A stretch of DNA of 64,000 nucleotides, taken from Podarcis erhardii. Taxonomy: Eukaryota. The DNA lies in NCBI GenBank assembly GCA_964252035.1, contig OZ176207.1; one strand, written 5' to 3'. Below, piece by piece: positions 2,330 to 38,415 of the stretch. The notes below the pieces were generated by a model. The model searched no databases. It worked only from the letters and a program-made list of their open reading frames with translations, and had not been told where the DNA came from. The position numbers and the translations under genes were made by a program. How positions within the stretch are numbered: position 1 is the first letter of the stretch; the number at the start of each line of letters is the position of its first letter.

Positions 2330-2373
2330 GGAAGGAAGGAAGGAAGGAAGGAAGGAAGGAAGGAAGGAAGGAA
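2330..2373. repeat. (GGAA)n microsatellite
   Basis: About 11 direct GGAA units; paralogous positions at 16454, 21930 and 47081. Confidence 0.95.
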
Positions 2374-5138: not shown

Positions 5139-5371
5139 TGCATTTCCTGATTTCTTCCTTCTTTCAGTATAGTCTGCAAGGCTCCCAGTACACTAATGTG
5201 AGATAATAGAAATGTTCTTCTTTTCAGCTGATCCTTGGGAAACTGAGAGCTTTCCTTTCTTGAGCAGCTTTTAAAAGAAAAGCTTTTCCTTTCTGCTTCG
5301 CTGATGTGTTAAGAGAGAGAGAGACTGCTCCAAGAGTCTCGGAAATGCTGAGCCATGGCTGCTTCCACGTT

Positions 5372-5410
5372 GTCCAACAGTGACACACTGAGTCCACATG
5401 GGGAACTGTA
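5372..5410 (-). promoter_or_regulatory. Pcdh conserved sequence element (CSE)/CTCF-type site of B1, CACT variant
   Basis: Minus strand TACAG-TTCCCCATGTGG-ACTCAGTGTGTCACTGTTGGAC, about 234 bp upstream of the ATG; matches the position and form of the Pcdh CSE. Confidence 0.75.
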
Positions 5411-7112: not shown

Positions 7113-9178
7113 TAAGCCCATGGCATGCATAGTCCTCACAATGGAGGATCTGCATCACACTTTTTCTTACATTCATGTTGGAGAGGATGGGACAAAATCT
7201 TTTCATTGCAACTTTAATCAACAGCATAGACGATGTGCCCTTAAGATGAATGTTGGCTAAATTCATTGCCCTCTGAAACAATTAACTTGCTGCTGCTCTC
7301 TGCTGCCAACACTATATATATATATAAAATAGGAAAGGTAAAGATCTACCATTGAATATGTTTCCTGTTCTGTATGGAGAGAGCCAACAAGGTTTCCCTA
7401 AGGACCTGGACTAAAACAAGTTGCACTATTTATAAAACAAATTATGTTTCATAACTATTAAAAGTACAATATATTACATTATCTGCAATGTGCCTTGTAT
7501 CCATAGCACAAAAATCTCTACGTGTGCATTATTCTTTTAAATATTTTCTTTTTGTAACAGAAAAAACACTAAAAGCCCAAAACTAACAGATGTGCATTTT
7601 ATTAATGTGATCAAGAGGATTTACCACTTGCATTTACAATAATGAAAAGTAACTACTGTTAGCACTATTTTTGTCTGGTGTTCCAATAATCCCTAAATAA
7701 TTCCCACTTTCTCTTAAACGTCAAACAATTTTGTGGGAATCCAAGCATCCTCCCAGCATACTTTTCATTGTGCAATTCACACATTAGTAGAACTTCAGGA
7801 TAGTCCTTCTATGACATTGTCAGAAATGGTCACGCAAACAACTTCCCCAAATTTCAGCACGTTACCATTCATTGTTTTCCTTACAGGAACAAAAAACAAA
7901 AACCCCACATGCCTCATAAAATGTCCCCCAAATACATCAATTCTTGCCACTGTAGTGTGTTTACAACACCAACCATGAAAGCATATTTTAAATAGAAAAA
8001 TATAAGCGACATGTCACCAAAGAGCACTGGAATCAAAACAGCTTACAGTCATGTGACAGAGGAGTAAAGAAACTTGCAATCACATTTCCAGTGATGCACC
8101 CATTGTAGCAGTGTGGAACTCCCTAGAAGAACACACCTTCGGCTGAAGCTGTTTTCATTCAAATTACGGGGAGAAGGCAACACACGACACCTTCTCTGGG
8201 GTTCAAAATTCTACCCGTACCTTACACTGGAAATCCTATTTAAGTAGAAAATACCCCCCCCCCAAGCCATTTGTGTGTTGCTGCTGTAGTTAAATAGCGG
8301 GTGAAGGTTGCAAATTACAGCGAGCATTATGCAACCAATCTTACAATACAATTGCTTGTAAATTTCTTCCCAGAGTCTCCTTACCATTGAATCTCCTCAT
8401 TTTATCATGCTAAAATATACCAACAGCCAAAATAACTCAGCCAATAAAAGGGTTAAGTAAATTCATTGTTACTTTTTTAAAAAGGTATTGTAGCAATGAG
8501 AATCTCAGTATCAGCTTATTGGTGGGCAGTTGGGTATGTAGTGGAAAGAGGTTACTGGATGAAAGATGGGAATGAACACTTACTTGTCATAGGATACTTG
8601 GCCCTAGTTTTCATGGAGGCAGCATAACTAAGCTTACCAGTAGCAAGGCAGGTGAGGGCTCACATTTATATACTTATTTATTGATACAGGTTTTTTAAAG
8701 AGTCTTAAAAATATGAAATAAAAGCCAAATACAACATACTAAGTTAAAACAATTAAGAATGCATTAAATCAATCTCACAGGAACTCACATGCTGAAGCCT
8801 TGTTCAAAGCGGGAGGAGATGAATACACCTCCACATGAAAATAGGTTGAGCCTAGCCTTCTCCTATACATCTCCCATGCATGATAGTTTTCAATTTGTAG
8901 GGAACTATAGATGTGCAAAAGGTTTTGTGAGCCTCCACCAGCAGTCCAAAATAAGAGACAAAGACTGATCATCTGATGCATCAAGATAAAGATTTGTTGA
9001 AAGAAGATACTTCACAGAAGGATCACATATAAAGTAATAACTAAAAGAAGGCGGGCTGAAAGGAAAAGAAAGAAGACTGACATAGTTCTGAATATAATGA
9101 GAAAGCAGAGGCAGATGGGAAATATATTCTGATATTAACAAAACAAAAAAGCATGTTAATCTAAAATTGTTTGCTCAC

Positions 9179-11581
9179 CTGGACTACGATTAAGCCTTCA
9201 TTGTTCAAGTTTAAATCTTCACCAGGTAGGATTGGATCCTTTGCCTCACAAGCTTCTTTATTGCTCAGAGTATTGGAATAATTTGCCTTTCTAGAGTCTG
9301 TAGTGAGAGAAACCTCCTGGCAGTAGGAGTGCAGAAATGCTCGGACTCCGTCAATCCCCACAAACTGTGAGATAGGAGCACCACTGAAATTCACACTCCC
9401 CGTCTCAAGCAGCTGAGAATTTCTCCATCTGTGCAACCTGACAGCCAGTAACACGAGGAGGAAGATGAAGAACAAGCAGGAGACAAAAGCCACTGCAAGG
9501 ACCAGGTAGAAGGTGAGGTCAGACGGAGGCTCTACAGGAGCTGAGATGCTGCTCAGGTCTGAGAGGATTGCAGGGATGGTGTCAGCCAGCACCACAGTCA
9601 GAGTGGCTGAAGCAGAGAGAGGTGGCTGCCCATTGTCCTTGACTAAAACCACCAGGCTTTGCTTGAGGGCATCTTTCTCCAGAAAGAAGCGGGCTGTCCT
9701 GATCTCTCCCGTGTGGAGCCCCAGAGTGAAGAGCCCTGGCTCGGTGGCCTTGATCAGCTGGTAGGAGAGCCAGGCATTCTGGCCAGAGTCCGCATCCACG
9801 GCCACCACCTTAGTGACCAGGTAGCCTGGCTCAGAGGAGCGAGGGGCCAGCTCTATCCCTGTGGAACCATCAGTGGGAGGGGAGGGGTACAGGATTTGGG
9901 GAGCACTGTCATTCTGGTCCAGGATGAAGAGAGTGACTGAGACGTTAGAGCTGAGTGGTGGAGAACCTCCATCTTGAGCCTTTACACGGAACCGAATGTC
10001 TCGAAACTCTTCATAATCAAAGGAGGTCAGAGCATATATAACCCCTGTCTCAGAGTTAATGGACAGGTAAGAGGAGAGGCGGGAGTCACTTCTTTGGTCA
10101 TCAGTGATGGAATATGTTATTCTGGCATTTTCTTCCCAGTCAAGATCATTTGCTCTTAAAGAAGAGACCATGGCTCCTCTTTGGTTATTCTCAACAAAAT
10201 AGAAAGTATAGTCTGTTTTTTCAAAGAGGGGTGGGTTGTCATTTGTGTCTAAAACATGAAGTGTGATAACTGTGACTGTAGAAAGAGGGGGGACTCCATG
10301 GTCAGTAACAGTGACAGTAATATTGAAGACTGACACCTGTTCCCTGTCAAGGGCACCAACAGTCACCAAACTGTAAAAGTTATCCATGGACTTCTTTAGC
10401 TGGAAAGGGAGGTTGCTAGGGATTGAACATGTGATTTCCCCATTGATTCCTGAATCTCGGTCTTGGACATTTAAAATGGCAATTACCGTTTGGGATGGTG
10501 AACTTTCAAGTATGGTGTTGGTGGCAAAGGTAACTGATAATTGAGGTGCATTGTCATTCAAATCCATAACAGATATCACAATTTTTGATTTGTCACTCAG
10601 GCCTCCTCCATCTTTGGCTTGTATCTCAAATGCATATAAAGATGATTCCTCATAATCAAGATTCCCAATAAGGATGATTTCACCTGTTGTGGAATTTAAT
10701 AGAAATATTTGGGAGTCGCGCTTTGTAATTTCTTGGAAAGAGTATTTAATGTCTCCATTGATTCCTTCATCCATATCAGTCGCTCTCACTGTCAAAAGTG
10801 TGGACCACTTGGGAATATTCTCATTGACACTCACTTCATAGAGAGGTTGGCTGAAAAATGGTGCATTGTCATTTGCATCAAGGACAGCGATGTGGATTTG
10901 TAATGTGCCAGATTTGATAGGATCACCTCCATCAGTAGCTGTGAGAAGCAAATCGTAAGATGATTGTTCCTCTCTGTCCAGTGACTTTTCCAACACAAGT
11001 TCAACAAGTCTGGCACCATTTTCTTTTGTTTGCACATGCAAAGCAAAATTGCTACTGCCTGTGAGTTGATAGGTCTGCACTGAATTTGTCCCCCAATCTG
11101 GATCTTGAGCTTTGGGTAGAGGGATCTGGAATCCAGGTATAGATGCCTCACTGATTTTCAGCTCCTGTTCCCATAGAGGGAAGTGGGGAGCATTATCATT
11201 TATATCCGTAATTTCCACTTCAATTCCATAAAGCTTCAATTTGCTTTCAACAAGAACCTGAAACTTCAACATACATTTCTCTGCCTCTCTGCAGATTTCC
11301 TCTCTATCTATTCTCTCAGATATCTGCAAATGGCCATTGTTGGCATTCAAAGAAAAGTACTGAATCATACCTACAGGAGACACAATGCGGAGTCCATGGT
11401 TTGGGAGCTGCTTGCCATCCATTCCCAGGTCCTTTGCAATATTCCCCACGGAAGAGCCTTTGTGCATCTCTTCTGGAATGGAGTAGTGGATCTGACCAGA
11501 AACTGCCTTCCAATAAAACATCATGAAAAGGCACTGGAAAATTCCCTTTCTGCAATTCCACAGCCTCTGAATTCCTTCCAT
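9179..11581 (-). CDS. PCDHGA: Protocadherin gamma-A-like variable exon (A2), 801 codons
   Basis: ORF 9161..11581: QIHYSIPEE, six EC repeats, TM, gamma-A tail [23 protein letters not shown]; donor CAG|GTGAGC after 9179. Confidence 0.95.
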
Positions 11582-11767
11582 TCTTGCAGCAGGTTAAAGA
11601 CCCTTAGATTTTTGTTCAAATGATACTGTATCCAACTCTTTTCTAAGGAAAATTCACTTCCATTTCTTCTTTACACTGACAAGCAGCTTGTTCCTTCAGA
11701 TATTTTGTGTTTGTGTTTAACGGAAAGGCAACTTCAACTGGGCAGGATTTCACATTTCTTCTCCATT

Positions 11768-11808
11768 CTGGTCAACAGTGACACCCAGAGGATCAAGCCC
11801 AAACTGCA
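11768..11808 (-). promoter_or_regulatory. CSE/CTCF-type site of A2, CACT variant
   Basis: TGCAG-TTTGGGCTTGAT-CCTCTGGGTGTCACTGTTGACCAG, about 187 bp upstream of the ATG. Confidence 0.8.
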
Positions 11809-12181
11809 AAAACTTCAGATATAGCTAGGATAACTATTCTTTTCCCTTAGAATTTACGCACTAAGGATAAATAAGAGTGACGACTTTTGTTGCTGTAATC
11901 AAATTGAAAGGGAGCAGGAAAGACAAGTGTGTTTAGGGTTCCTGCCCTGCCCCATTACTGGAATTTCTGGAATAAATGTTATGGATCTTTCTCAGCAATG
12001 TTTTCTGCTCACTTTTCTCTAGATTTTTTCTTGATGTAGAAACAACACTAGTAAACCACCAGTACATCCTTGTGACCTCTGACACTTCACTCCTCTCAGC
12101 TCCTATTTGTTCATTCACATCTCTACGCTGTTCACCTTCAAACTGAATATTTATTTTTTGGTACATGTTACATAAGCCCTA

Positions 12182-12506
12182 CTGCAAGAAAATCAAACGT
12201 ATCCAATCTTCAGGAAATCAGCCCTGAGTGCTCACTAGAAGGACAGATCCTGAAGCTGAGACTCCAATACTTTGGCCACCTCATGAGAAGAGAAGACTCC
12301 CTGGAAAAGACCCTGATGTTGGGAAAGATTGAGGGCACAAGGAGAAGGGGACGACAGAGGACGAGATGGTTGGACAGTGTTCTCGAAGCGACCAGCATGA
12401 GTCTGACCAAACTGCAGGAGGCAGTGGAAGACAGGTGTGCTTGGTGTGCTCTGGTCCATGGGGTCACGAAGAGTCAGACACGACTAAACGGCTAAACAAC
12501 AACAAC
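12182..12506 (+). mobile_element. BovB (RTE) LINE, 5'-truncated 3' end
   Basis: Encodes the BovB ORF C-terminus (RREDSLEKTLMLGKIEGTRRRGRQRTRWLD), (CAA)n tail, 12-bp TSD with one mismatch ACATAAGCCCTA/ACGTAAGCCCTA (12170, 12507). Confidence 0.9.
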
Positions 12507-15500
12507 ACGTAAGCCCTATTTGGGCATACACTGTCCAGACATGAGCAAACACCTGAGGAGAAATATGGAGTGCTTCTTAGTTCTTTCCTGTCCAGCATTT
12601 CATCTGTACACAATCCAGATCCCTCCATGAATTTGAGGACCAAGGTCTGAGGTGGGGAGCTTACTCTACTTGTAGGGGCCCCACACATGATATGGAACTT
12701 TGCACCATCATATTTTCTTTGCTTACACTTGAGGAGATTGTTCAAATAATGCTGTACTGGGTAGGAGATGCACATCATGAATGCTCCAGTTCAAATCAAA
12801 CTCCAACCATGAGTTCATTAGTTGTCCTTGGGCAAGACTCCCTTCCTCCTCTCTCTGGTTGAATTCACGCAGCAGTTTCATCCGTTTCCCTGATGTTTCC
12901 CTAACTATTAATTTCTGCATTATATTTGAGTTTTCACATGGCATGAAATCCACTTCATTTCCATGTTATTTAATTGCAGGAAAAAATCCATTTGCTGCTT
13001 CGTTAAACCGGAAAATAGCAGGAGTAAAGTGATGAAATTTGGGGCTGTATACATGGGGGAATGAATACATGCACAGCTGTTGGTGGAATATTGGCAATGT
13101 TATCCAATGATGTTCATTGTTGCGTCACACCATGCACACTGGTGTGAATGAAATTTAGTGGAACATGATATATTGCTCATATATTGATATGCTGATATAT
13201 TGGTCAAAAATATAAACATAACACAACTGGTACTGCAGTGTGAAAGGATCATTGGAAAACAGATTAGAGGCACTAGCGTTCTAGTCAGGAAAACTAATGC
13301 AATACTTTCCACATCTAAATGCAAATGTATCCTCTCTCCATCTCATCCACAATATGAGGAAAATAATGCTGATCTATCTTTCTGGGTTATTAAAGGGTTA
13401 CAAGGGAATGTATATCAACTATTTTCTACACTAAAGTGCTCTATAAACACCAAGTTAGACTGTACAGTGCAAAGAAGGCCATGTCCTCCTTAATTTATTG
13501 CTCACATTGTGCCTAGAAGAAAATAAAGCCAAGACCAATGCTATTAAAGCCAATTATTATTACTACACCATACCACATTACAGAGATAAAAAGAAGCAGG
13601 AAGAAATTGGCGACACATGCAATGGGGTGGAGCTGTGGAGCCACCCTCCAACACTAGTGTTGTTGCTGGGACTTACCTGGTCAGGGCTGGGCTGACACAA
13701 CTGTGTGGTTGGGGCTGTGCAGGTGCACCAGCAGCAGTGCTAAATGTTCCCACAGTTAAAAGCACATGACTCCAGCCTCACTCTGCCCCATCCAGGTAGG
13801 CAACATTGTATGGGGGTGGGGGGTGAATTCACCAGCTGCCCACCACCATGCATGTCACTACTGCAGGTGGGTTACTTTCAATGGCAGCTTATGAGCTCAT
13901 GTGTGACAATCAGTTGTCAAGCTCAGAACAAGCATTATTAAAAACTAGCATGTGATGACCTGTTAAACCTCCAATCATCTTTCTTGGAGATCTTGATCTT
14001 CTTCTGCTTCTTGTTCTACAAAATCAGCAGGACTAATAAAACTGCTATACTGAATTTGCTGAATGCTTTCCCCCAGAAGACAGAAAATCAAGCATCCGAT
14101 CCACTAAGCAATGCCATAAAGGTTTCTTTCAAAATTAGTCTTCATCCTTCACTACAAAATATGCACTGGCAACAAAATTTTTGACACATTAGGAGCAATC
14201 CAGCATTAATGTATATGAAGCAGCAGATACAGGGCTGTGCAGCCATATGCCCTGGCCAGATTGCCTTTCCATGGGAAAGCATTCCCAGCCAAAGAGGTGA
14301 GAGAGGGCATCTAACATTGTTATGACTCAATAGTCATTTGTAACCTATGTTACTACAACATGGAAGCATGACTGGAGATGGTATAGGTAGAAATACTAGT
14401 CACATGCACACTCAGCTACATATATACTGTTGACCACAACTGTTCCAACTGGTCATAATTTCTAATCATACATTGCAAATGCTCTTAGCTGTTTTGACTG
14501 TTATGCAAAGGGGGAAAGAGATTTTGGGTTCATGATGCAGACATATTTGGGTCAGCATATAGGTCAATACAGGGACCCCTGTTTTTCCCTATTGCTCATT
14601 GCCTGTGTTTTGTCTTTCTAGTATATGGTTTTTGGAGGTGGGGAATTGATGCATTTTATATATTTATTTAAAATAATTATATAGTACCAGTCCCACACTC
14701 AAAGAGTATCTAGGTTGTGTATAATATTGATTTAAGACCATATAAGCACCAGTTCAATGCAATAATATGCATAATAAAGTACAGTATATAATACTGTTGT
14801 CAGCAACTTAGTGGAGTTGAACACCGATGGCCAGCAAATACTTGTTCACATAGATACATCTTTAAGTTGATGAAAACACTGCACCTCAATAATCTCAATA
14901 ATCTCAATAATCATTTGTCACGTATGTTACTACAGCATGGAAGCATGACTGGAGATGGTATAGGTGGAAATACTAGCCACATGCACACTCACCTACATAC
15001 ATACTGTTGACCACAACTGTTCCAACTAGTCATAATTTCTAATCATACATTGCAAATGTTCTTAGCTGTTCTGACTGTTAAGGAAAGGAGGAATACTGTA
15101 CTGATGCAGGTAATGAGACAACCAGGAATGCCTCCACTGAAGATCTTGGTGAACAGTTGAATTGATATGAGAACAATCATAATCTTGAACAATCTTTGCT
15201 AAGTTGTTTTAGAAAGGATGAGGTAAAATATTGGACAATTTAGGAGTGCTTCATTAATCTTTTTGTGACATATTGGCATAGTCTCCTTTGGGAAGTTGTG
15301 GACTCTCCTTCATTGGAGGTTTTTTTAGCAGAGGTTGGATGGCCATCTGCCATGGATGCTCTAGCTGAGATTCCTGCATTGCAGGGGGTTGGAGCAGATG
15401 ACCCTTGGGTCCCTTGCAACTCTATGACTCCATGAGAGAAAGTCTAATTGCACCACTCATTGATCAGACAAAGGCTGTGCACGAGCTCTTTTCATTCTGC

Positions 15501-25013: not shown

Positions 25014-27540
25014 TTTGCTATTTCTGTAATTCTACATGGAATTTTATCTCTAAAGTAGGGAATTGCTTGTAATACAAGTTCACCTTTAAATGCAATCAGA
25101 AACAAATTTCTTCTCCACTTGTGTGCACCCTCTTCGCTTCCCAGTGCCTCACCGTTCAGCATCATTAATAGTTTCTTTCTTTAAAAATGGAAAAAAAACA
25201 AAAAAAGAAAAACCATAGGAATAGTAGAGAGTGGATGCCTGTTTGTGAGGAGGGCTCATCAGATATATAAAGTTTGTTTTCAGAGGCTTCTAAAGAAATT
25301 GTGGTCTTCTAGATCATTTAAGGAGTGTAATTCCTTGTCAGGGTACACATGGTTTGTCAATGTCTCCTTTATTGGATCAGGAGGCAGTGGGGTCTACATT
25401 TGACATGCTCCCTGGCAGGAAGTTCCAGTTCTGTGCATGTTCATTTCTGGTTTGAGGTTAGATAGGACTCTCCTACCTCTGCCGACTGACAGTTACCACC
25501 AGCACCCCACACTTTTTCAAGGGTGATTTTATTTTTACTTGATAAAGGGAAGAAATGGCAGGGAGGTTTAGCTAATGGTACTGGTGAAACCCATTTTATG
25601 CTTGAAATTAATTCAAAGAAAACTGGGTCGTCGCTGAATTAAAGTGATTAAAAAAGATGGGAGAGCTTATATTTAAAATCTTCTCATAGGACCTGGACTA
25701 AAGCTAGCTGCACTCTTTATAAAAGAGACAACATGTTATACATTATTATGTTATTTGCTATCTGTCTTTCACCCAGTTTAAACATAGCATTAATACCTCT
25801 ATACTTTTGCATAATTCCATTTAAAAAGTTTCTGTAAAGGAATAAAATACTGAAAGACCAAACTAACCAAAGTGCATATGATCAATGTGATCAAAATATT
25901 TTACCACTTTTATTTACAATAATGTAAAGAACTATTTCTAGCACCATTTCCCCCACAATGTTCCCAAGTAATAAATCATTTCCAGTTTCTCTCAAACAAT
26001 TTTGTGTGAATCAAAGCATCCCCACCTCCGCTCCAGTGTAGTTTTCATTCTGCAACGAGTGGACTTCCAGGACGTTGTCACAAATGGTCACCCCTACAAT
26101 ATCTCCAAAGTTCAGCCCCTACCAGCTACAGCTGTGTCAATAACTTGGCACAAACCATATAATGTTGCTTGGGGACATCTCTCTAACCAAGGACAGTTTT
26201 TTTGTGAGTTTCTTAATAGGGTCAGAAACACATCCCACAAATAAGTGTTGTCCAGCTTGGGATGTTTGGACATTGTTAAGCACTCTTCTTCTGACACCAC
26301 AGACACATATATTTTCTGGGATTCAAAATTCTACCCTCAGCTTATATTGCAAATCTCATTGGGGTAGAAACCCCCCCCCCCAAAAAGTTAGTGTGTTGCT
26401 GTTGTTTTCTGACATAGGGTGAAGGTTCCAAGCTATAAGGAGCTTAATGCAACCAATCTTACATACAATTGCTTGCATTTTTTCTTTTTTATTCCCAGAG
26501 TCCCCTCCCCAATTAAGTCTCTTTATCTTATCATTCTAAAATATACAAACATCAATAATATCTCAGTCAATAAAGAGTTAAGTAAAACCATAACTGCTTT
26601 TGGAAAATGACATAACAAGCCTTTTGGCAATGGGAATATCAATATCAGCTTTCTGGAGGGAGTGTAGTGGAAAGGGGTTACTTACTATCAGAGAAGTCCC
26701 TATGAAGTACCATGGACATGCAAACAAGTCCACCACAGTTACTTGCTGACTAGATGTTTGACTATTCTATCTGTCCATGCAGACCACAGTAGGTATTTGT
26801 AGCGTACAAGCTGCTTGAAAGAAAAGAAAAATGAATCAGTTTGTTTCCAGGTTAAGAGCTTGTCTGCCTGAATGACTGGTGTGGACACTGACTTGTCATA
26901 GGCCGCTAGTTTCTAGTGCTCACCGAGGCAGTAAGCCTATGTCTTGCCAGTACCGAGATAGGTGGCAGCTCACATTTATATACTCATTTATTCATATACC
27001 AGCTGTCTATCCATCCATCCCAACGTTTGGAAATGTCATGCAGAAATGAGATAAAAACAAAATACAACAGTCAAAGTTAAAACAATTAAGAATGCACCAA
27101 ATCCATCCGTAAATTAAACAAGAACCCACATACTGAAGTCTTGATCAATACTGGTCAGGAAATACACTTCACATAAAAACTAGGTGAGAGGAATAAAATT
27201 AGGCTAATAACTGGCTCCCAGACATGATTGTTTGCAACATGTAGGGAACTATGTTTTCTTATAGAGGAACATTCTGTTTTATGAGCCCCCACCAGCAGTC
27301 CGAAGTAACACAAATGAGGCAAAGATTGGTCACCTGATGCATCAAGATAAAGATTTGATGAAAGAAGTTCCTCCACAGAAGGATCACATATGCAGTGATG
27401 ACTAAAAAGGGGAGCTGAATGGAATAAAAAGAAGACTGGCATAGTTCTGAATATAATGAGAAACCAGAGGTAAATGGGAAATATATTCTGATATTAATAA
27501 AACAAAACAAAATCATGTTAATCTAAAATTGTTTGCTCAC

Positions 27541-29943
27541 CTGGACTACGATTAAGCCTTCATTGTTCAAGTTTAAATCTTCACCAGGTAGGATCGGATC
27601 CTTTGCCTCACAAGCTTCTTTATTGTTCAGAGTATTGGAATAATTTGCCTTTCTAGAGTCTGCAGTGAGAGAAACCTCCTGGCAGTAGGAGTGCAGAAAT
27701 GCTCGGACTCCGTCAATCCCCACAAACTGTGAGATAGGAGCGCCACTGAAATTCACACTCCCCGACTCAAGCAGTTGAGAATTTCTCCACCTGTGCAACT
27801 TGATGGCCAGTAACACAAGGAGGAAAGTGAAGAACAAGCAGGAGACAAAAGCCACTGCAAGGACCAGGTAGAAAGTGAGGTCAGACGGAGGCTCTACAGG
27901 AGCTGAGATGCTGCTCAGGTCTGAGAGGACTGCAGGGATGGCGTCAGCCAGCACCACAGTCAGAGTGGCTGAAGCAGAGAGAGGTGGCTGCCCATTGTCC
28001 TTCACTAAAACCACCAGACTTTGCTTGAGGGCATCTTTCTCCAGAAAGAAGCGGGCTGTCCTGATCTCTCCCGTGTGGAGCCCCAGAGTGAAGAGCCCTG
28101 GCTCAGTGGCCTTGATCAGCTGGTAGGAGAGCCAGGCATTCTGGCCAGAGTCTGCATCCACGGCCACCACCTTAGTGACCAGGTAGCCTGGCTCAGAGGA
28201 GCGAGGGGCCAGCTCTATCCCCGTGGAGCCGTCAGTGGGAGGGGAGGGGTAAAGGATTTGGGGTGCATTGTCATTCTGGTCCAGGATGAGGAGAGTCACT
28301 GAGACGTTGGAGCTGAGTGGTGGAGAACCTCCGTCCTGAGCCCTTACATGGAACTTAATCTCCCGAAACTCTTCATAATCAAAGGAGGTCAGAGCATATA
28401 TAACCCCCGTCTCAGAGTTAATGGACAGATAGGAGGAGAGGCGGGAGTCACTTCCTTGGTCATCAGTGATGGAATATGTTATTCTGGCATTTTCTTCCCA
28501 GTCTGGATCACTTGCTTTCAGGGAAAAGACTGAGGCTCCTCTTGGATTATTTTCTAGGAGGTAAGAGGTGTAGGCTGACTGTACAAAGAGTGGGGGATTG
28601 TCATTTGTGTCTAACAGCTGCAGTGAAATAATTGCAGAGGTTGATAATGTTGGAGTCCCATTATCAGTTGCTGTAATAGCGATGTCATAGGTTGCCACTT
28701 GTTCCCTATCAAGGGCTCTGTCTGTCACTAAAGTGTAAAAATTGTCCATTGTTTTTTTAAGTTGGAAAGGAAGACTGTTGGAAATTGAGCATATAACCTC
28801 CCCATTGACTCCTGAATCTCTGTCTTGGACATTTAAAATGGCAATGACAGTTCCAGTTGGTGTGTTCTCAGACACAGCGTTGAGTACAAAGGTTATTGCT
28901 ATTTCAGGTGCATTGTCATTTAAGTCTTTTACAAAGATAACAACCTTTGATCTGTTACTTAGGCCACCACCATCAATGGCTTGCACCTCAAATTCATATA
29001 AGGATGATATTTCAAAGTCAAGGCTTCCTGCAAGGGTAATGTCTCCCGTTGTTGAATTCAGTAGAAACATTTTAGAAATCTTCTCTGTGTTTTTTCCAAA
29101 GGAGTATTTTACCTCTCCATTGATTCCTTCATCTATATCAGTGGCTCGCACTGTGCAAACTATAAACTCTTTAGGAATATTTTCCTTTATGGTTGCTTCA
29201 AAGATCTGTTGTGTGAAAACCGGTGCATTGTCATTTGCATCTAGAACAATCACATGAATTTGAGCAGTACCAGATCTCACTGGATCACCCCCATCAGTAG
29301 CTGTGAGGATTAGATCATAATCTGGTTGCTCTTCCCTGTCCAGAAGTTTCTCCAGCACCAGCTCAGCATGTCTTGCCCCATTTTCTCCTGTCTGCACATG
29401 CAGAGAAAAATGGCTACTGCCTGCAAGTTGATAATCTTGTATAGAATTTATCCCTAGATCTGGATCCTGAGCTATGGGTAAAAGAAACCTGTCTCTGAGT
29501 GTTGATGTCTCACTGATTTTCATTTTCCATTCCTTTGGTAGAAACCAGGGTGCATTGTCATTTATATCTGTAATTTCCACTTCAATACCATAAAGTTTTA
29601 ATTTACTTTCAATAAAAACCTGCAACTTCAATATGCATTTGTCTGCCTCTCCACAGATTTCCTCTCTATCTATTCTCTCAGAAATCTGTAAATGGCCATT
29701 GTTGACATTCAAAGCAAAATACTGAACCATACCTACACTGGAAACAATGCGGAGTCCATGGTCTGAAAGCTGCTTCTCATCCATTCCCAGGTCCTTTGCA
29801 ACATTCCCCACAAAAGAGCCTTTCTGCATCTCCTCAGGAATGGAATAGCGGATCTGCCCAGAAATTAGCTTCCAGATGGTCACCATGACAAGGCATTGAA
29901 GGATTCCTTTTCTGCAACTCCCGAGTCTCTGGGTTTCTTCCAT
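27541..29943 (-). CDS. PCDHGA: Protocadherin gamma-A-like variable exon (A5), 801 codons
   Basis: ORF 27523..29943: [18 protein letters not shown], six ECs, gamma-A tail; donor CAG|GTGAGC after 27541. Confidence 0.95.
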
Positions 29944-30175
29944 GATTTTGTACCAGGATAAAAAATGCTGGTTCTGTTCAAAAGCTCTAATGATTGGTTT
30001 CTGGTGTTCCCTTTGTTCTGCTCCTAGTTCCAGTTCAAAATAGCGAAATTGTTTCTAAGCAAAACTTCCTTCAGTTTTGCTTTCTGTACTGTCATGTTCA
30101 GCCTTGCCTCAGTTATTGTGTGCTGCACTGTAATAGCTAAGGTTGTGAGGCTAGATCTTTTACTTTTTTCCCTTA

Positions 30176-30216
30176 TTGGTGAACAGCGACACCATGAGGC
30201 TCAATACAAAACTGCA
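30176..30216 (-). promoter_or_regulatory. CSE/CTCF-type site of A5, canonical CGCT box
   Basis: TGCAG-TTTTGTATTGAG-CCTCATGGTGTCGCTGTTCACCAA, about 233 bp upstream of the ATG. Confidence 0.85.
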
Positions 30217-30453
30217 GAAGCCTTATTTTGGAATCCTAAATATACATTTTCTTCCATACAGTAACTCCTTCTATTCTTTATGGTATTATCAGGAAATTTC
30301 AGTTGACTGGTCTTTTTGTTCAACTCATTAATAGATATATAACTCATATAAGCCAGTTTTGTCCTTAAAAAAAAAAATCACAATAGGTACTTTTTCTCAG
30401 GTGTTCTCATGTTTACTCCCAGTCTTAGTTGAATATTGAATATTATAAGCATA

Positions 30454-30694
30454 CAGTGGTACCTCTAGTTACAAACTTAATTTGTTCCGGAGGTCCATTC
30501 TTAACCTGAAACTGTTCTTAACTAGAGGTGTGCTTTCGCTAATGGGGCCTCTTGCTGCTGCTGCGCCGCCAGCAAATGATTTCCGTTCTCATCCTGGGGC
30601 AAAGTTCTCAACTTGAGGTAACTCTTCCAGGTTAGTGGAGTTTGTAACCTGAAGCGTTTGCAACCTGAGGCGTTTGTAACTAAAGGTACCACTG
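30454..30694. mobile_element. Tc1/mariner (Tigger-like) MITE, family 2
   Basis: TIR CAGTGGTACC...GGTACCACTG, TA TSDs; an inverted copy of the same family is at 45647..45886. Confidence 0.85.
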
Positions 30695-32109
30695 TATAAC
30701 CAAGGATCTGGCAGGTGATTATACTACGATATGTGCAATTCAGTCCTGCTCATCTATGTATGCTGATCTATCATGTGCAGTTTTCTAATCATTCTTCCTC
30801 CCGCTCCCATTTCCTTCTCAGAGTTAATTCTTTATTTGACCTTCACATGCAGTTACATTTGTGTGATTTCCCCCCCAACCCTGTCCAAGTGGTTCTGTCT
30901 TTCACAGGCAGCTCTTAGATGCAGGGGATTGCATAATGGAAAGTCAGCTTCCACAGGGCTGTGCTTGAAAAATAATCATGCATCCTCTTTCCTCTCCATC
31001 TTTCCCTCCTTCAGTAATCCCATGTGCCCAGTTTCTCTTTCTTCAGTTCTCATCTGATAGTTCCTCAGGCTCTTACGCTGACTAACTTTGAGATGAGAAG
31101 TTTCCATTACATCCAGTAAGTAGAACTGCAGAGCGTTTTCACTGAAAGCCAATAATCAGAACAAGATTAATGGAAGTAAAGTGTCCAAGAACTAAGACTT
31201 GCACCCTGCCCATCATGAGGATAGCTATTCATTCTAGTACCATAATAATCTGAAACGGGCGTTTTGAAACAAGAGATGTATTGAGGGTATCAAGAAGGCA
31301 CTTTTGTTGTCACACCATTACATTCTAAGGTAGCAGATTTGAATCTTTTAAGTCTCCATTGAAGTGGGGAAACAATTTCGATAATCTATCCCAGATACTT
31401 CCAGTTTGCTGTTGTATTCCATTATTCTCTTATGACTTTATCACTGACAGCTCTTCTTTTGGAGGCTTGGTTGTTCTCTGAAGTCAACTCAATTTGACTT
31501 TGGCCATCAACTCAGTCACTTCTTTGATTTATAGCTAACCAACAATATTCTCAAATGAACATATCTCACATCATGGCCACTGGGAGGTGTGACTACAATT
31601 ATCTGAAATCCCACCCGTGATTCCATAGGCACCCATATCTAGAAATGTGGTAACTTTACTGTGTAGTTGGAGGCTACAGGTATTCAGATGGCCTCTCATG
31701 AGGTATGCTTTTAAGTAGGCGCCATGTAGAAGGTAAGATAATAAACACCAGTGTCTCTTCTACTTCCTGCTGAAGTAGGGACCTGAAACATCAGAAACAG
31801 AAGCCTAGCTGGATGCCGTTTGAGTTGTGGTGAAAGCTGGCGAAGCACAAGAAAACCGAGTGACTCAGAAGTCTTCTAAATAGCATGCCTCTTGCTTGGG
31901 AGCTGCTTTCCTCCAGTCTCCATGCAGCTGGGGCGTAATGAGTGAGCTGATCACGCAGGTCCTACCCACATAAACTGAACACACTCCTCTTGCATAAACT
32001 CAACCTACATGGCTTCTCACTTAGATCCCAACTGCATAGGGTCTACTCATAGAAAGCAGCTCCCTCATGCCTAATAATAGCTAATAATACTTGGATCATG
32101 ACTGGATGC

Positions 32110-32710
32110 AGAAAGGGGACATTTTTAACAAAACAACTTTCAATAGAGATAAATTTAAATCTCTGCGTTAGGTAGGAAGAATCAGGTGCACAAATCTAGG
32201 ATGGGTGATACCTGGCTTGACAGTTGTACATGTGAAAAGGAACTAGGGCTTTAGTAGACCACAAGGTAAATATGAGCCAGCAGTGCGACACAACAGCTAA
32301 AAAGGCTAATGCAGTTCTAGTTCACATCAACATAAATACTGTGTCCAGTTTGTGAGAAGTAATGGTATATTTATATCCTGCTTTGGTCAGACAACCTCAC
32401 CCAGAGTACTGTGCCCATTTCCATGCACCACAGTTTAAGAAAAATATTGGCAAACTGGAAGGTGTCCAAAAAGGGGAAACAAAAAAAAATTCAAATTGCA
32501 AGAAAAAGTATTTAGACAATAGTCTAAATAGGAAGAACGTTTTGCAGACATGAGCTGCTTGAAAGTGGATCAGACTGCATCCATTAAGTTGTGTACTCTT
32601 CTTCATTAGAAGTTCTAAACAGAGATTATCAGCAATGGTGAATTTCTTGCATTGGCAGATGGTTGGAATAGATGATTATTGAGGTCGCTTTCAACTCTAT
32701 AATTCTAATA
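32110..32710 (+). mobile_element. Degenerate CR1 LINE fragment (RT C-terminus and 3' UTR)
   Basis: GTAGACCACAAG...ATGAGCCAGCAGTG...AAAAAGGCTAATGC...GAGTACTGTG, ending TCAACTCTATAATTCT. Boundaries approximate. Confidence 0.7.
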
Positions 32711-34524
32711 TGTGAAGTGAGAACACATGTGTCTCCACTATGATAAAATGCAAGAATTTCACCTGCTAGAATCATCCATCATTCCATGATCCTTGCGCCT
32801 AGCCCTGCTTTCCATATTATACAGGAAGGAATAAATGTCACTCACACCTCAGTTTCCTTTTGTTTTGAACATGTGATGCTCCCCTCAAACCATCCTAGAA
32901 TTTGGAGTGATAGTATTGCAGCAGCAGTAAATAAATTGTCTTCTTTTTCTATCATTTGCCCCCAAATATGTAAAGAAGAATTTGGCAGAGTTCTTTTGGA
33001 AGAATAAATCTGGACTCTGTACGCTAAGGTAATTTACCTCAGACTTTGCAGATAAAATAATAGTCATTTCAACAATCCTGCCATGGAGTCAGTGTGGATT
33101 TTTAAAAAAATGTCTATATTTGGGATATAGTCAAGAATATTCAGCTTCAAGGCAGGATTAATGCCTATTGGAATAAAAAGGCCTGCAGCAGGCAGTGAAA
33201 TGCCATCAGGAAGGAGGCCCAGAGGACTTTCCAGGGCAGGGAGTTCCACATCCCTTCCATGAATACCTGCCTAATATATCTTAGATAGTGGTCCCCTGTG
33301 GCAGGGAGGCACATGGCAGCATGTCTACCAGAAGTATTGTACGGTAGTTACCCCATCTAGGTAAAAATATAAATTCAGGTGGTCAGGGAACCAGTACAGC
33401 TTCACGTCATTTTATAAGGCCTCAGTCCCAAGGCCTGCTCATTTTGCCTCAGCAAGGAAGCGGGGAGGTGGTTCTGCCAGGCTGAGGGCCTGCTCTTCAC
33501 CTTTAGCTGCTGCCACCTCAGAAACCTGACAGTTTGCCTGTTTTGCAATTACACCAGGCGCCATCGGTCTTTCTGGACCAGTGGGCACATTTTTAATTCT
33601 GAGAGAGTGCTGTGGGTGCAAGTCACAAAATGGCTGCCATGGGTGCGTGGCATAATACAAAATGGCTGCTGTGGGGAGCACGGTATACCACAAAATTAGA
33701 GTGAGCACGGTCATGGTGAAACTTTTCCCATAATTGTATTTCCATACTAGGAAAGGCTCAACCTCTTGAATTTTTGTCTGCCATACATCTGTTAAAGGCA
33801 CAAGAACCCTGTTTTCCCCCAATGCCAACCCTAAACCAAAGCCTCGTCTGCCATCCTGCATCCATTAAGCACGTCTGAGTAGGTATGTATACCATTATAC
33901 TGTAAGTTAACTATACAGTGAATTCTTAATGATTGGCAGGTCTTTAGCTCTTTCACAGCATAAGATATGTCTAAGCCTCTTTGCAAAGTGTTCACATTTG
34001 CCTTTGGGTGAGTTTTTAACATCCATCCATATTTACTGTGTAGTAATATCTAGAGAAAATAACTTCTCTAGGGATTACTTTACCTCAGAGAAACCCACCA
34101 CAGGAATGACGCATCCCAGTTTCTAGGAACAAAAATCAGGACTCTGCGCTCCAGCATTGCATATATACTGGATTTTTTATTTTTATTTTTTTTAGCAAGG
34201 TATAATATGAGGCCTAGTAAGGGATTGAAGGTGCTTGCTTAATTGTGAGTGCAGTAGAAAAAGTACCGGTATTCAGAAAAGATAAAATTTTCCTCAGAAG
34301 AAGGGGGGAGGAGCGCTGCCAGCACTTCTAAAACATGAAGCTGCCACAGATAAACACAGGAGATCAAAAAGAGTGAATATGCATTTTCTGGAAGAGGCTC
34401 AACAGCAGAGATTAAGGTTTATCTGTCAGAAGATAATTAATTACCTTATTTAGTGACAGGAAAGTTCTGGTATATTTTCTCCAGGAACAGTTTTGTATGT
34501 AGCAAAAAGCCAAGCAGTGCTTGG

Positions 34525-34705
34525 CAAGGCCGGCCCAGTACATTTTGGCACCTGAGACAGACCCCAGAATGGCACCCCCTCCCCACCAAGGAAGGTGGGG
34601 TGAGTGAAGATCTACGTCAGGAACTGACATCAGGATCTGCTGCCCTGGTGGACTCTGCCGCCTAAGGTGGTCACCACACCTTCCCTCGTGGGTGAGCCGG
34701 CCCTG
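34525..34705. mobile_element. hAT-type MITE
   Basis: TIR CA(A/G)GGCCGGC, 8-bp TSD GTGCTTGG/GCGCTTGG (one mismatch). Confidence 0.7.
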
Positions 34706-35151
34706 GCGCTTGGCCTTTCCAAGCCATTACAAGAAACAGCTCTGTCTCTGCCAAGTCTTATGTGAGAGTCTCTCCGATCCACACACCTCCCTGTCTTTGA
34801 TCTTATCCTTTTAGAGGTTTGGAAAGTGGTAGAGGTCCATCATATGGAAGATTCGCTTTAATCATTGCATATGGGAGTGTTTTCTTCTGCCAGTTTACAT
34901 CTTTGATTTTTCTTCTGCCCTACCCATCCCGGCAGAGAACATGAGAATCCACATGACATTTACTAATGGAAAAGACAGAAGATTCAGCCTAAAACTAATT
35001 GCACAAATGCGCTAAATAATCTATCTTAATTAATATTCAGTTAGTATGTTATTTTCATTTTTCTCGATTCAGCAGATACTGGAATATCAGTCAAACAAGT
35101 GTATAAGTATAACTCATGATTATTCTTACTATGCACACGTTATTACAAAAT

Positions 35152-35315
35152 CAGTGGCGTAGCGTGGGGGGTGCAGGGGAGCCGCACCGGGCACAACATC
35201 TGGGGGTTAGGGTTAGGGGGTGCAAATCCACGGGTTAGGGGGTGCAAATCCACGGGTTAGGGGGTGCAAATTACTTGCCTTGCCCCGGGTGCTGACAACC
35301 CACACTACGCCACTG
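35152..35315. mobile_element. hAT-type MITE with internal 22-bp TTAGGG-containing tandem repeats
   Basis: TIR CAGTGGCGTAG/CTACGCCACTG, perfect 8-bp TSD TACAAAAT (35144, 35316); internal GGGTTAGGGGGTGCAAATCCAC about x3. Confidence 0.88.
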
Positions 35316-35764
35316 TACAAAATATCCTACAACTATATGGTACATTTCGGCCAAAGAAAAGCATTTCTGGGACCCAGTGATTTCTGAAGAAGGAACTTAA
35401 GCATGTGCTTATCTCTCCTATGGATGGTGCCCATAATATTGATGTTCATTTAAAAAGCTGCATAGCATCAATTATATTTTTACATACCATAATATATACT
35501 TGGCAATGAGGATCAGAGAGTCATTTTACTACTGGGCAATATAACAGTAAAGATAAGAAATGTAATTGAGTAAAATAATTTGTCTGTGTTATAACATGAA
35601 ACACAAATACTGAAAAAACAACTGTGGTGTTACTAATAAATATCAAACAAAGTGCTAGCTATAATAATAGCCTCCAGTATAGTATTGCAGATCAGCAGAT
35701 AGATGTAAAATTCACCAAGATGAGTAAGTTCATATAAAAACAAAAGATAACCTGATTAACTCAC

Positions 35765-38188: not shown

Positions 38189-38374
38189 CCTTGCAGCAGG
38201 TTAAAGACCCTTAGATTCTGGTTCAAAAGATGCTGTATCCAACTCTTCTCTAAGGAAAATGCACTTCCATTTCTTCTTTGCACTGAAAAGCAGCTTGCTC
38301 CTTCAGATATTTTGTGCTTGTGTTTAACAGAAAGGCAACTTCGATTGGGCAGGATTTCTCATTTCTCCTCCGTT

Positions 38375-38415
38375 CTGGTGAACAGTGACACCCAGAGGAT
38401 CAAGCCCAAAGTGCA
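38375..38415 (-). promoter_or_regulatory. CSE/CTCF-type site of A6, CACT variant
   Basis: TGCAC-TTTGGGCTTGAT-CCTCTGGGTGTCACTGTTCACCAG, about 187 bp upstream of the ATG. Confidence 0.8.

What the first reader, a model, noticed from the sequence alone, without database searches (positions are those of the whole stretch)
9179..11820. A2 appears to be a chimeric exon: A6-type 5' half and promoter, A5-type 3' end and intron flank
Seen: A2 matches A6 from the promoter through EC5 ([29 protein letters not shown]) but matches A5 in the tail ([15 protein letters not shown]...EGLIVVQ) and downstream intron. The flanks agree: 8560-9178 resembles 26880-27540, and 11582-12080 resembles 38190-38760. The switch falls in the homogenised EC6-TM tract (about 9330-9990). 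Inference: unequal crossover between A5 and A6 precursors fused them, removing the ~8 kb between (or the reciprocal insertion created A5 and A6). This would pair an existing recognition domain with a different cytoplasmic tail.
Basis: partly seen in the sequence, partly recalled or inferred. Interest (0 to 1): 0.7.

Follow-up and report, generated by a model that had tools for sequence, protein, structure and literature searches.

The report
Ancient hybrid protocadherin exon in lizards
One of ten tandem nerve-cell recognition (protocadherin-gamma) exons in this lizard window really is a hybrid of two neighbouring exon types, but it is old, shared by other lacertid lizards and kept by selection, and it was made by the ordinary ectopic recombination that shapes such gene arrays.

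Summary
The window holds ten minus-strand protocadherin gamma-A/gamma-B variable exons. A2 (9179-11581) follows A6 from 12070 down to 9513: 96% identity and dS 0.09, against dS 0.99 to A5. It follows A5 from 9317 down to about 8925, with a shared 21-nt deletion. The best split lies between 9512 and 9317 (Fisher 5e-86).

It is not an assembly artefact and not recent. The same hybrid, with orthologous flanks, is present in Podarcis raffonei, Zootoca vivipara and Lacerta agilis, with omega 0.2-0.27.

The amphisbaenian outgroup carries the A6-type tail on the alpha-type ectodomain, so A6 keeps the ancestral combination and A2 is derived.

Distal flanks show that A4(3')-A3-A2-A1 is an old paralogue of A8(3')-A7-A6...A5-A4 lacking 8245 bp. 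That is what a crossover in the homogenised EC6-TM tract would give. In L. agilis the parental A6/A5 pair is itself fused in the same interval.

High identity to A6 and A5 is bounded, while the distal flanks are only 57-74% identical. Later gene conversion in halves therefore also acted, and conversion alone is not excluded.

This is a new member of a known kind and of modest interest. An earlier scan note on nearby gamma-B exons of this genome also reported conversion mosaics.

The parts
9179..11581 (-). A2: protocadherin gamma-A-type variable exon. It has 801 codons, is intact, and encodes signal peptide, six cadherin repeats, TM and variable cytoplasmic segment.
   Evidence: ORF. Pfam Cadherin_2 plus 5x Cadherin plus Cadherin_C_2. 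Best hits are lacertid 'protocadherin gamma-A6-like' proteins.
9177..9178 (-). Splice donor GT of A2 (CAG|GTGAGC), identical to that of A5.
11768..11790 (-). Conserved promoter element of A2 (GTGTCACTGTT core). It is of the type found once upstream of each of the nine complete exons. A2's copy differs from A6's at one base.
   Evidence: Its identity with the Pcdh CSE/CGCT box is from my own knowledge.
9513..12070 (-). A6-like tract of A2: about 490 bp of promoter, then EC1 to EC6.
   Evidence: 500:49 and 17:8 diagnostic sites. 96.0% coding and 86-91% promoter identity to A6. dS 0.092.
9318..9512 (-). Switch interval, from TM to the conserved GIDGVRAFL segment (codons about 690-755). A5 and A6 are 99.5% identical here, so the junction cannot be placed more finely. 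It contains 10 consecutive A2-private sites (9380-9465).
8925..9317 (-). A5-like tract of A2: the last 46 codons (short tail with a 21-nt deletion at about 9290) plus about 250 bp of intron.
   Evidence: 13:140 diagnostic sites. 97.8% tail and 88.5% proximal-intron identity to A5. Shared deletion.
8192..8924 (-). Distal 3' flank of A2, an old paralogue of A5's 3' flank (26312-27279).
   Evidence: 72% BLAST identity. 57-74% in sliding windows. No match to A6's 3' flank.
12071..13043 (-). A2-locus-specific segment of about 970 bp, absent from the A6 locus. It marks the 5' limit of high A2-A6 identity. Most of it is also present in the P. raffonei, Zootoca and L. agilis orthologous loci.
13044..14482 (-). 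Distal 5' flank of A2, an old paralogue of A6's distal upstream flank (38838-39978). It continues into A3, which matches A7.
   Evidence: 61-71% identity.
35765..38763 (-). A6 exon plus promoter: the 5' parent type (alpha ectodomain with the long 'type I' tail, the ancestral combination).
26854..29943 (-). A5 exon plus 3' flank: the 3' parent type (beta ectodomain with the short 'type II' tail).
27875..36119 (-). The 8245-bp stretch (A6 3' end, spacer, A5 promoter and 5' part) that has no counterpart at the A2 locus.
   Evidence: Coordinate mapping. No relic of it near A2.

Best explanation
A2 is a functional hybrid variable exon of the protocadherin-gamma cluster.

Origin: in the stem of the lacertid radiation, or earlier, a block of the type B-alpha-beta-B (like A7-A6-A5-A4) existed in two tandem copies. 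In one copy, ectopic homologous recombination between the alpha exon and the beta exon joined alpha's promoter and EC1-EC5/6 to beta's cytoplasmic tail and intron. The exchange took place inside the EC6-TM tract that all gamma-A exons share almost identically. About 8.2 kb between the two exons was deleted. This is a Lepore-type unequal crossover.

Afterwards each half kept exchanging sequence by short gene conversion with the parent it resembles. On the 5' side this stopped at a 970-bp heterology at 12071. That is why the identity is high only near the exon.

The hybrid was kept under purifying selection and was itself tandemly duplicated in several lacertids.

Consequence: it is transcribed from its own A6-type promoter and spliced to the constant exons like any other variable exon. 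It presents an A6-like trans-recognition ectodomain (EC1-EC4), the shared EC6 cis interface, and an A5-like membrane-distal variable cytoplasmic segment.

Shown: the mosaic, its age, the flank collinearity, the polarity, and the selection. Inferred: crossover rather than conversion as the founding event, the order of duplication and deletion, and expression.
For: 1. Mosaic: best split 9512|9317, Fisher 5e-86. dS is 0.09 vs 0.99 in the 5' part and 0.03 vs 0.32 in the tail. A 21-nt deletion is shared with A5.

2. Collinearity on both sides, well beyond the exon:
- The A2-A3 spacer matches the whole A6-A7 spacer: 13044-13501 with 38838-39244, 13672-13794 with 39250-39364, 13855-14482 with 39387-39978, 16413-20189 with 41088-44873.
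- The A3-A4 spacer matches the A7-A8 spacer: 20450-21224 with 44872-45646.
- The A1-A2 spacer matches the A4-A5 spacer: 8546-9178 with 26854-27540, 8192-8556 with 26312-26682, 7394-7867 with 25681-26124.
- A2's 5' flank does not match A5's, and A2's 3' flank does not match A6's.

3. Not an artefact, and old: orthologous hybrid loci exist in P. raffonei (flanks 92-94%), Zootoca (85-90%, two tandem copies) and L. agilis (85-91%). Orthologue dS is 0.07-0.12 and omega 0.20-0.27.

4. Polarity: in the EC1-4 tree the lacertid alpha clade (SH-aLRT 99) has Rhineura P0023 as sister (95). The P0023 tail is 84% identical to A6's tail and 58% to A5's. Zootoca P0123 also has alpha plus the long tail. A5's 5' half is as far from alpha as A9 is (dS about 1).

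5. The mechanism is seen directly. L. agilis P0127 sits at the A6/A5 position. Its upstream flank is orthologous to A6's (85-90%). Its tail and 3' flank are orthologous to A5's (91-95%) and run on into the A4, A3, A2 and A1 orthologues. The split falls in the same interval (Fisher 7e-193).

6. A second 3'-end replacement in the window (A9 plus the relic at 54130-54545) shows the tract is a recurrent exchange point.
Against: - A single crossover predicts uniform divergence outward from the junction. Instead, A2-A6 identity is 86-96% only between 12070 and 9513 and 61-71% further upstream. A2-A5 identity falls from 98% to about 60-74% within 400 bp of the exon. The present similarity therefore reflects bounded exchanges, and these alone could in principle have built the mosaic.
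- The apparent age of both young tracts (noncoding identity 86-91%) is about that of the Zootoca split, while the distal flanks are about 2.5-3.5 times more diverged.
- The EC1-4 tree within the alpha clade does not sort cleanly by tail type. Window A6 groups with short-tailed Podarcis proteins (SH-aLRT 95), which shows ongoing exchange.
- An A5 (beta) orthologue was found only in P. muralis, as a partial model. The link between the beta ectodomain and the short tail therefore rests on weak outgroup similarity (Tiliqua, 73-75% vs 65%).
- The L. agilis fusion could be an assembly collapse. No read data were available.
Confidence: 0.6

Rival explanations
1. Gene conversion only. The A2 locus originally held an ordinary whole exon, either alpha-type or beta-type, inherited with its block. 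One half was later overwritten by a non-crossover conversion tract from A6 (about 2.6 kb: promoter to TM) or from A5 (tail plus about 250 bp of intron). No deletion ever occurred.
For: - The high-identity tracts are bounded on the outer sides, at 12070 and about 8925.
- Region-restricted conversion of EC5-EC6 and the 3' end is documented for protocadherin clusters, including Anolis gamma-a (PMC2764143; PMC4978886).
- A 195-bp A5=A6 patch (99.5% identity) shows recent conversion in this very window.
- An earlier scan note (s1-263200) reports conversion mosaics in neighbouring gamma-B exons.
Against: - The distal flanks on the two sides are paralogous to different parents at the old divergence level. 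A resident whole exon should have both flanks of one parent.
- Saving this model requires the old duplication junction to lie in the 970-bp unique segment, only 75 bp (in A6 coordinates) from where the conversion tract ends. That would be a coincidence.
- An unambiguous deletion-type fusion at the same interval exists in L. agilis.
Confidence: 0.3
2. Reciprocal polarity. An A2-like alpha-short exon is the ancestral state, and A5 and A6 were created from it by duplication or insertion of about 8 kb.
For: - L. agilis has a single alpha-short exon at the A6/A5 position.
- Alpha-short exons are the commonest alpha form in annotated lacertid proteomes.
Against: - A5's 5' half differs from alpha by dS of about 1, as much as A9 does, and groups with non-lacertid exons.
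- The A5-A6 spacer shows no homology to A2's flanks beyond the promoter motif.
- Rhineura and Zootoca carry alpha with the long tail.
- Zootoca has the order alpha-long, an 806-aa exon, B, B, alpha-short, as in the window.
Confidence: 0.05
3. Assembly chimera. A2 is a mis-join of A6-like and A5-like reads within the near-identical EC6-TM tract.
For: The junction lies in about 800 bp that are 94-99% identical among the three exons.
Against: - The same hybrid with orthologous flanks occurs in three independent assemblies of other genera.
- A2 has its own private substitutions and its own flanks.
- The window contains no N runs.
Confidence: 0.02

Closest known systems
Region-restricted gene conversion in clustered protocadherin variable exons (Noonan et al. 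2004, cited in PMC2764143 and PMC4978886; Jiang et al. 2009 for Anolis gamma-a)
   Same: - The EC5-EC6/TM part is homogenised among paralogues while EC1-EC4 stay distinct. Here dS is about 1.0 in EC1-4 and 0.10-0.33 in EC5/6-TM.
- Anolis gamma-a1-10 likewise shows low dS in ECD5 and ECD6.
   Different: - Here the homogenised tract separates two parts with different parents, and the flanks are discordant as well. A structural hybrid is implied, not only homogenisation.
- Neither paper's text holds 'unequal' or 'chimeric'. The Noonan 2004 paper itself was not held.
Lepore-type hybrid genes made by unequal crossover between tandem paralogues (delta-beta globin Lepore, red/green opsin hybrids, CYP21A1P/CYP21A2 chimeras). 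These are from my own knowledge and were not looked up.
   Same: - 5' part and promoter come from the upstream paralogue, and the 3' part and flank from the downstream one.
- The junction lies in a stretch of high identity.
- The intervening DNA is lost.
   Different: - Both parents persist in the same array, so a prior or subsequent block duplication is needed.
- The event is ancient and fixed, not a disease allele.
- Later conversion has blurred the flank signal.
Lacerta agilis P0127 (XP_033010126.1), the exon at the A6/A5 position
   Same: - Same two parents and the same switch interval.
- Same product: alpha ectodomain with the short tail, read-through ORF of 806 aa.
   Different: It is an in-situ fusion. 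Its flanks are orthologous (85-92%) to A6's upstream and A5's downstream flanks. It is an independent event at the parental locus, whereas A2 sits in the paralogous downstream block and has its own L. agilis orthologue (P0121).
Gamma-protocadherin variable cytoplasmic domain (VCD) function (O'Leary et al. 2011, PMC3216661)
   Same: The swapped part belongs to the roughly 90 cytoplasmic residues encoded by the variable exon. In mouse gamma-A3 a 26-aa segment of these controls endolysosomal trafficking.
   Different: - Judged by position (inference), that conserved segment lies mostly in the part that A2, A5 and A6 share (GIDGVRAFL...). The swap changes the residues just after it, including the 7-aa deletion.
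- No functional data exist for lizard tails.

Membership tests
Clustered protocadherin gamma-A variable exon | One large exon encoding a signal peptide, six cadherin repeats, TM and a short variable cytoplasmic segment | tested here: met
   The 801-codon ORF hits Pfam Cadherin_2 (1.3e-32), Cadherin with 5 stretches (7.9e-74) and Cadherin_C_2 (3.7e-24).
Clustered protocadherin gamma-A variable exon | Ends at a 5' splice site that joins it to shared constant exons | tested here: inconclusive
   The donor CAG|GTGAGC is present. Lacertid relatives P0001 and P0128 carry the same exon type followed by the gamma constant region (QAQPNTDWRF...). The direct orthologues are annotated only as read-through 806-aa models.
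Clustered protocadherin gamma-A variable exon | Own promoter with the conserved sequence element about 200 bp upstream of the ATG | tested here: met
   GTGTC[AG]CTG[GT]T occurs exactly once upstream of each of the 9 complete exons. A2's copy is at 11768-11790. CTCF binding was not testable.
Clustered protocadherin gamma-A variable exon | Member of a same-strand tandem array, with closest relatives named gamma-A | tested here: met
   Ten minus-strand exons. The top hits are 'protocadherin gamma-A6-like' from lacertids, 95% identity.
Hybrid gene from unequal crossover (NAHR deletion product) | Two segments of the gene have different closest paralogues, with a single switch | tested here: met
   Best split 9512|9317, table [[518,57],[13,140]], Fisher 5e-86. 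Segment trees agree.
Hybrid gene from unequal crossover (NAHR deletion product) | Each flank is collinear with the flank of the corresponding parent, and the DNA between the parents is absent | tested here: met
   Searches show the collinearity. 8245 bp are absent. There are no exon relics near A2.
Hybrid gene from unequal crossover (NAHR deletion product) | Uniform divergence from each parent outward from the junction | tested here: not met
   Identity is 86-98% near the exon but 57-74% in the distal flanks, while orthologous flanks are 85-94%. Later conversion has to be invoked.
Gene conversion tract (non-crossover) | High-identity tract bounded on both sides by older divergence, with the donor retained | tested here: inconclusive
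   The outer boundaries exist (12070 and about 8925) and the donors are retained. The inner boundary of each tract is the other tract. The old-layer flanks already point to two different parents.

The most novel reading that the evidence does not exclude
The near-identical EC6-TM tract of gamma-A exons works as a recombination hinge. It repeatedly reassorts recognition ectodomains (with their promoters) and variable cytoplasmic tails as modules. At least three independent events are visible here:
- A2, in the lacertid stem.
- The in-situ A6/A5 fusion in Lacerta agilis.
- A9, which took an A10-type 3' end and left its original 3' end behind as a relic.

Selection keeps some of the products for tens of millions of years. 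Homogenisation of EC6-TM would then be not only a by-product of shared cis-interface constraints but also the substrate for modular isoform shuffling.
Probability: 0.3. Interest if true: 0.5.

Novelty: new member of a known kind. Interest (0 to 1): 0.3.

Why it matters
The case gives a clean, dated example of how protocadherin isoform repertoires change by more than duplication and point mutation. An existing recognition ectodomain and promoter were re-paired with another exon's cytoplasmic tail. The product was then fixed, conserved (omega about 0.2) and amplified.

With the L. agilis in-situ fusion and the A9 relic, it marks the EC6-TM tract as a recurrent breakpoint.

For annotation, it warns that orthology of lacertid gamma-A exons cannot be read from whole-exon trees. 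It also warns that copy number at this locus differs between lacertid genera.

It does not change the accepted picture of cluster evolution by unequal crossing-over and gene conversion.

Tried and rejected
- **DNA of the A6 orthologue (Zootoca P0123) and of P. raffonei P0001.** This failed because the gene ranges exceed 100 kb. Only gene-order lists were returned.
- **A5 (beta-type) orthologues.** Two searches, one scored on residues 1-480 of the whole exon and one with those 480 residues cut out as the query, found none in Zootoca, L. agilis, P. raffonei or P. lilfordi. The only hit was the partial P. muralis P0005. The 806-aa Zootoca exon at the A5 position therefore could not be typed.
- **Noonan et al. 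2004.** The paper is not held.
- **The 970-bp A2-specific segment.** It has no other copy in the window and no tandem repeats. Its nature (transposon insertion or deletion in A6) is open.
- **tblastn for exon relics.** None were found near A2 or in the A5-A6 spacer. The only relic is the one downstream of A9.
- **A donor for the 10 A2-private sites at 9380-9465.** None was found among A5, A6, A9 or the orthologues. The patch is better read as a recent A5=A6 conversion plus A2-lineage changes.
- **Within-alpha EC1-4 tree.** Branches are too short (0.005-0.015) to assign orthology by tail type.
- **Not done.** No structure or complex prediction was run, because nothing in the claim depends on one. 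None of the fetched loci is human.
Full report
**What is in the window.** There are no N runs. All ten long ORFs lie on the minus strand. They are variable exons of a clustered protocadherin-gamma-like array. A2 carries Cadherin_2, five Cadherin repeats and Cadherin_C_2, and its best database hits are lacertid 'protocadherin gamma-A6-like' proteins.

Two exon subtypes alternate:
- Gamma-A-like: A2 9179-11581, A5 27541-29943, A6 35765-38188, A9 54983-57409, and A10 from 62563 (cut by the window end).
- Gamma-B-like: A1, A3, A4, A7, A8.

Each gamma-A exon ends at CAG|GT. Each of the nine complete exons has one copy of a conserved promoter element, GTGTC[AG]CTG[GT]T, about 190-240 bp upstream of its ATG. 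The species is a lacertid lizard. It is closest to Podarcis but identical to none of the annotated species.

**The observation.** It is confirmed in every particular.

Sliding-window identity:
- 11730 to 10095: A2-A6 0.92-1.00, A2-A5 0.66-0.89.
- 10094 to 9295: all three exons 0.93-0.99.
- 9394 to 9073: A2-A5 0.93-0.98, A2-A6 0.51-0.81.

Diagnostic three-way sites, A6-type versus A5-type:
- 12070-10143: 500 vs 49.
- 10142-9513: 17 vs 8.
- 9512-9318: 1 vs 0.
- 9317-8925: 13 vs 140.

The best single split is 9512|9317 (Fisher 5e-86). Synonymous divergence agrees. In the 5' 1.44 kb, A2-A6 is 0.092 and A2-A5 is 0.989, as far as A9. In the tail, A2-A5 is 0.033 and A2-A6 is 0.316. A2 and A5 share a 21-nt deletion at about 9290.

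The switch interval runs from the TM to the conserved GIDGVRAFL segment. It cannot be narrowed, because A5 and A6 are 99.5% identical there. That identity is itself a sign of recent A5/A6 conversion, and it explains the ten consecutive A2-private sites at 9380-9465.

**Not an artefact, and old.** Orthologous loci were fetched around single-exon gene models.

- In Podarcis raffonei (L001) the exon of P0124 and both its spacers match window 14881-1768 collinearly at 92-94%.
- In Zootoca vivipara (L002) the same locus matches at 85-94%. It is followed by a B exon and a second copy of the hybrid 12.3 kb downstream.
- In Lacerta agilis (L003 and L004, merged) P0121 is the A2 orthologue, with distal flanks at 85-91%.

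In all three the exon has the same alpha 5' part and short tail. Orthologue dS is 0.071 to Podarcis and 0.120 to Zootoca, with omega 0.20-0.27. The hybrid therefore predates the split of these genera and has been under purifying selection since.

**Polarity.** In an EC1-EC4 protein tree the lacertid alpha exons form one clade (SH-aLRT 99). This clade holds A2, A6 and eleven proteins of five species. Its sister is Rhineura floridana P0023 (SH-aLRT 95). A5 groups with its P. muralis orthologue P0005, far away among non-lacertid exons.

The P0023 tail is 84% identical to A6's long tail and 58% identical to the short tail. Zootoca P0123 also combines alpha with the long tail, 89%. So alpha plus long tail (A6) is the ancestral pairing, and alpha plus short tail (A2) is derived.

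That the short tail belongs natively to the beta lineage is only weakly supported. Tiliqua relatives of A5 are 73-75% identical to the short tail and 65% to the long one.

**Structure of the array.** Self-comparison shows that A2's flanks are paralogous to different parents well beyond the exon.

- The A2-A3 spacer contains, in order, essentially the whole A6-A7 spacer: 11583-12070 matches 38190-38763, 13044-13501 matches 38838-39244, 13672-13794 matches 39250-39364, and 13855-14482 matches 39387-39978.
- A3 matches A7, and the A3-A4 spacer matches the A7-A8 spacer.
- The A1-A2 spacer contains, in order, the A4-A5 spacer: 8546-9178 matches 26854-27540, 8192-8556 matches 26312-26682, 7394-7867 matches 25681-26124, and 5144-5470 matches 24749-25073.
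- A2's 5' flank does not match A5's, nor its 3' flank A6's, beyond the promoter motif.

Thus A4(3')-A3-A2-A1 is a tandem paralogue of A8(3')-A7-A6...A5-A4 that lacks 8245 bp, from A6 36119 to A5 27874. No relic of the missing part lies near A2. This is the arrangement expected if an alpha exon and a beta exon of a duplicated block recombined unequally inside the tract they share.

**A natural replicate.** In L. agilis the exon at the A6/A5 position, P0127, is itself such a fusion.

- Its upstream flank and promoter are 85-90% identical to A6's, and only 47% to A2's distal flank.
- Its 5' coding part is 96.0% identical to A6.
- Its tail is 95.0% identical to A5.
- Its proximal intron is 92.5% and its distal intron 90.9% identical to A5's.
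- The alignment then runs on for 9 kb through the A4 and A3 orthologues to the A2 and A1 orthologues.
- The split falls in the same interval (Fisher 7e-193).

Here the divergence is uniform and at orthologue level on both sides, which is the signature of a true deletion-type crossover. Zootoca has the window's order: alpha-long, then an 806-aa exon, then two B exons (one annotated, two seen in L002), alpha-short, B, alpha-short. The unfused state is therefore ancestral and the L. agilis fusion is independent. An assembly collapse in L. agilis cannot be excluded without reads.

**Why one crossover is not the whole story.** In the window the high identity is bounded.

- A2-A6 identity is 86-91% in the 490 bp upstream of the ATG. 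Beyond a 970-bp segment that only the A2 locus has (12071-13043), it is 61-71%. That segment is present in the orthologues too.
- A2-A5 identity falls from 98% to about 81% by 8925 and is 57-74% further out.
- Orthologous flanks to Zootoca are 85-90%. The block duplication is therefore roughly 2.5-3.5 times older than the last exchange between A2 and its two 'parents', and that exchange dates to about the lacertid radiation.

The most coherent reading has two layers. The first is an old structural hybrid. The second is later conversion of each half by the parent it resembles, stopped on the 5' side by the 970-bp heterology. The same boundary separates P0121 and P0127 in L. agilis: 51% identity beyond -490 and 89% within it.

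A conversion-only origin remains possible. It requires the old duplication junction to lie by chance next to the end of the conversion tract. The within-alpha tree, in which window A6 groups with short-tailed Podarcis proteins, also shows that exchange continued.

**Function (inferred).** A2 should be chosen by its own A6-type promoter and spliced to the gamma constant exons. Relatives P0001 and P0128 are annotated that way. The constant exons lie outside the window, and I built and searched no spliced model.

It would present:
- EC1-EC4, which differ from A6 at 31 nonsynonymous sites (dN 0.028).
- The EC6 region shared by all gamma-A exons. A2-A9 identity is 95-97% at 9994-9695.
- A membrane-distal variable cytoplasmic segment of A5 type, which differs from A6's in 21 of about 46 codons plus a 7-residue deletion.

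In mouse gamma-A3 a 26-residue part of this variable cytoplasmic domain controls endolysosomal trafficking (PMC3216661). By position that segment lies mostly in the shared part. Any functional effect of the swap is therefore unproven.

**Comparison with what is known.** Homogenisation of EC5-EC6 and the 3' end by gene conversion is a textbook feature of these clusters. It was reported for Anolis gamma-a exons (PMC2764143; PMC4978886). Cluster evolution by tandem duplication is equally established (PMC4151104, listed).

Three full-text searches turned up no paper whose title or abstract describes a hybrid variable exon in lacertids. In the two papers I read, the words 'unequal' and 'chimeric' do not occur. 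The case is a new member of a known kind. It is a Lepore-type hybrid within a protocadherin array that became fixed, conserved and amplified. An earlier scan note on gamma-B exons 77 kb away in this genome (s1-263200) reached a similar 'conversion mosaic' conclusion on other DNA.

**Side observation bearing on the mechanism.** About 440 bp downstream of A9's donor lies a decayed 3' fragment of a gamma-A exon (about 54130-54545). It runs from the TM to the tail and has one frameshift, one in-frame stop and a GT donor.

Its tail is most like that of Rhineura P0026 (63%, against 26% to A9's present tail). P0026 is the sister of A9 in the EC1-4 tree. A9's present 3' part is A10-like: 88.6% identity from 56420 to 54895, with mid dS 0.106 against 1.1 in the 5' part. 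A9 therefore seems to have received a foreign 3' end and to have kept its original one as a relic. This would be a second exchange at the same hinge.

Noticed in passing
window 54130-54545 (minus strand): A decayed 3' fragment of a gamma-A exon lies about 440 bp downstream of A9. It runs from the TM to a long-type tail and has 1 frameshift, 1 in-frame TAG and a GT donor. Its tail is closest to that of Rhineura P0026, the EC1-4 sister of A9. It may therefore be A9's original 3' end, displaced when A9 acquired an A10-type 3' end.
   Followed up: partly
L004 10001-12421 with flanks (Lacerta agilis CM020422.1:4861367-4883787): P0127 is an in-situ fusion of the A6 and A5 orthologues. Its upstream flank is A6-type and its tail and 3' flank are A5-type. 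About 8.2 kb is missing, and the switch lies in the same TM-proximal interval as in A2.
   Followed up: yes
window 1-5436 vs 14022-19528: A1 plus its 3' flank is 93-97% identical to A3 plus its 3' flank (97% over 1-863). This looks like a recent duplication with a period of about 14 kb. A further alpha-short exon may lie just left of the window, as in Zootoca (P0125-B-P0128) and P. raffonei (P0124-B-B-P0001).
   Followed up: partly
window 27679-27874 vs 35924-36119 (A2 9318-9512): A5 and A6 are 99.5% identical over 195 bp, and A2 has ten consecutive private sites there (9380-9465). This points to a recent short A5/A6 conversion patch in this lineage.
   Followed up: partly
window 5376, 11774, 19468, 24979, 30182, 38381, 44117, 50114, 57607: The conserved promoter element occurs exactly once per complete exon. 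Its central CpG (GTGTCGCTG) survives only at A5 and A9. The other seven read GTGTCACTG.
   Followed up: partly
window 12182-12506: This stretch of about 326 bp in A2's upstream flank is absent from the orthologous loci of P. raffonei, Zootoca and L. agilis. All three alignments break at 12181/12507. It is a lineage-specific insertion of unknown nature.
   Followed up: no
window 9695-9994 and the equivalent parts of A5, A6, A9, A10: The EC6 coding stretch is 95-98% identical among all five gamma-A exons, although their EC1-EC4 parts differ by dS of about 1. It is not shared with the gamma-B exons, which are 67-70% identical.
   Followed up: partly
gene-order lists of P. raffonei and Zootoca: Exon number and order in this block differ between lacertid genera. 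No alpha-long isoform is annotated in P. raffonei. P. raffonei has a 1634-aa fused model upstream of the A2 orthologue. Zootoca has an untyped 806-aa exon at the A5 position.
   Followed up: no
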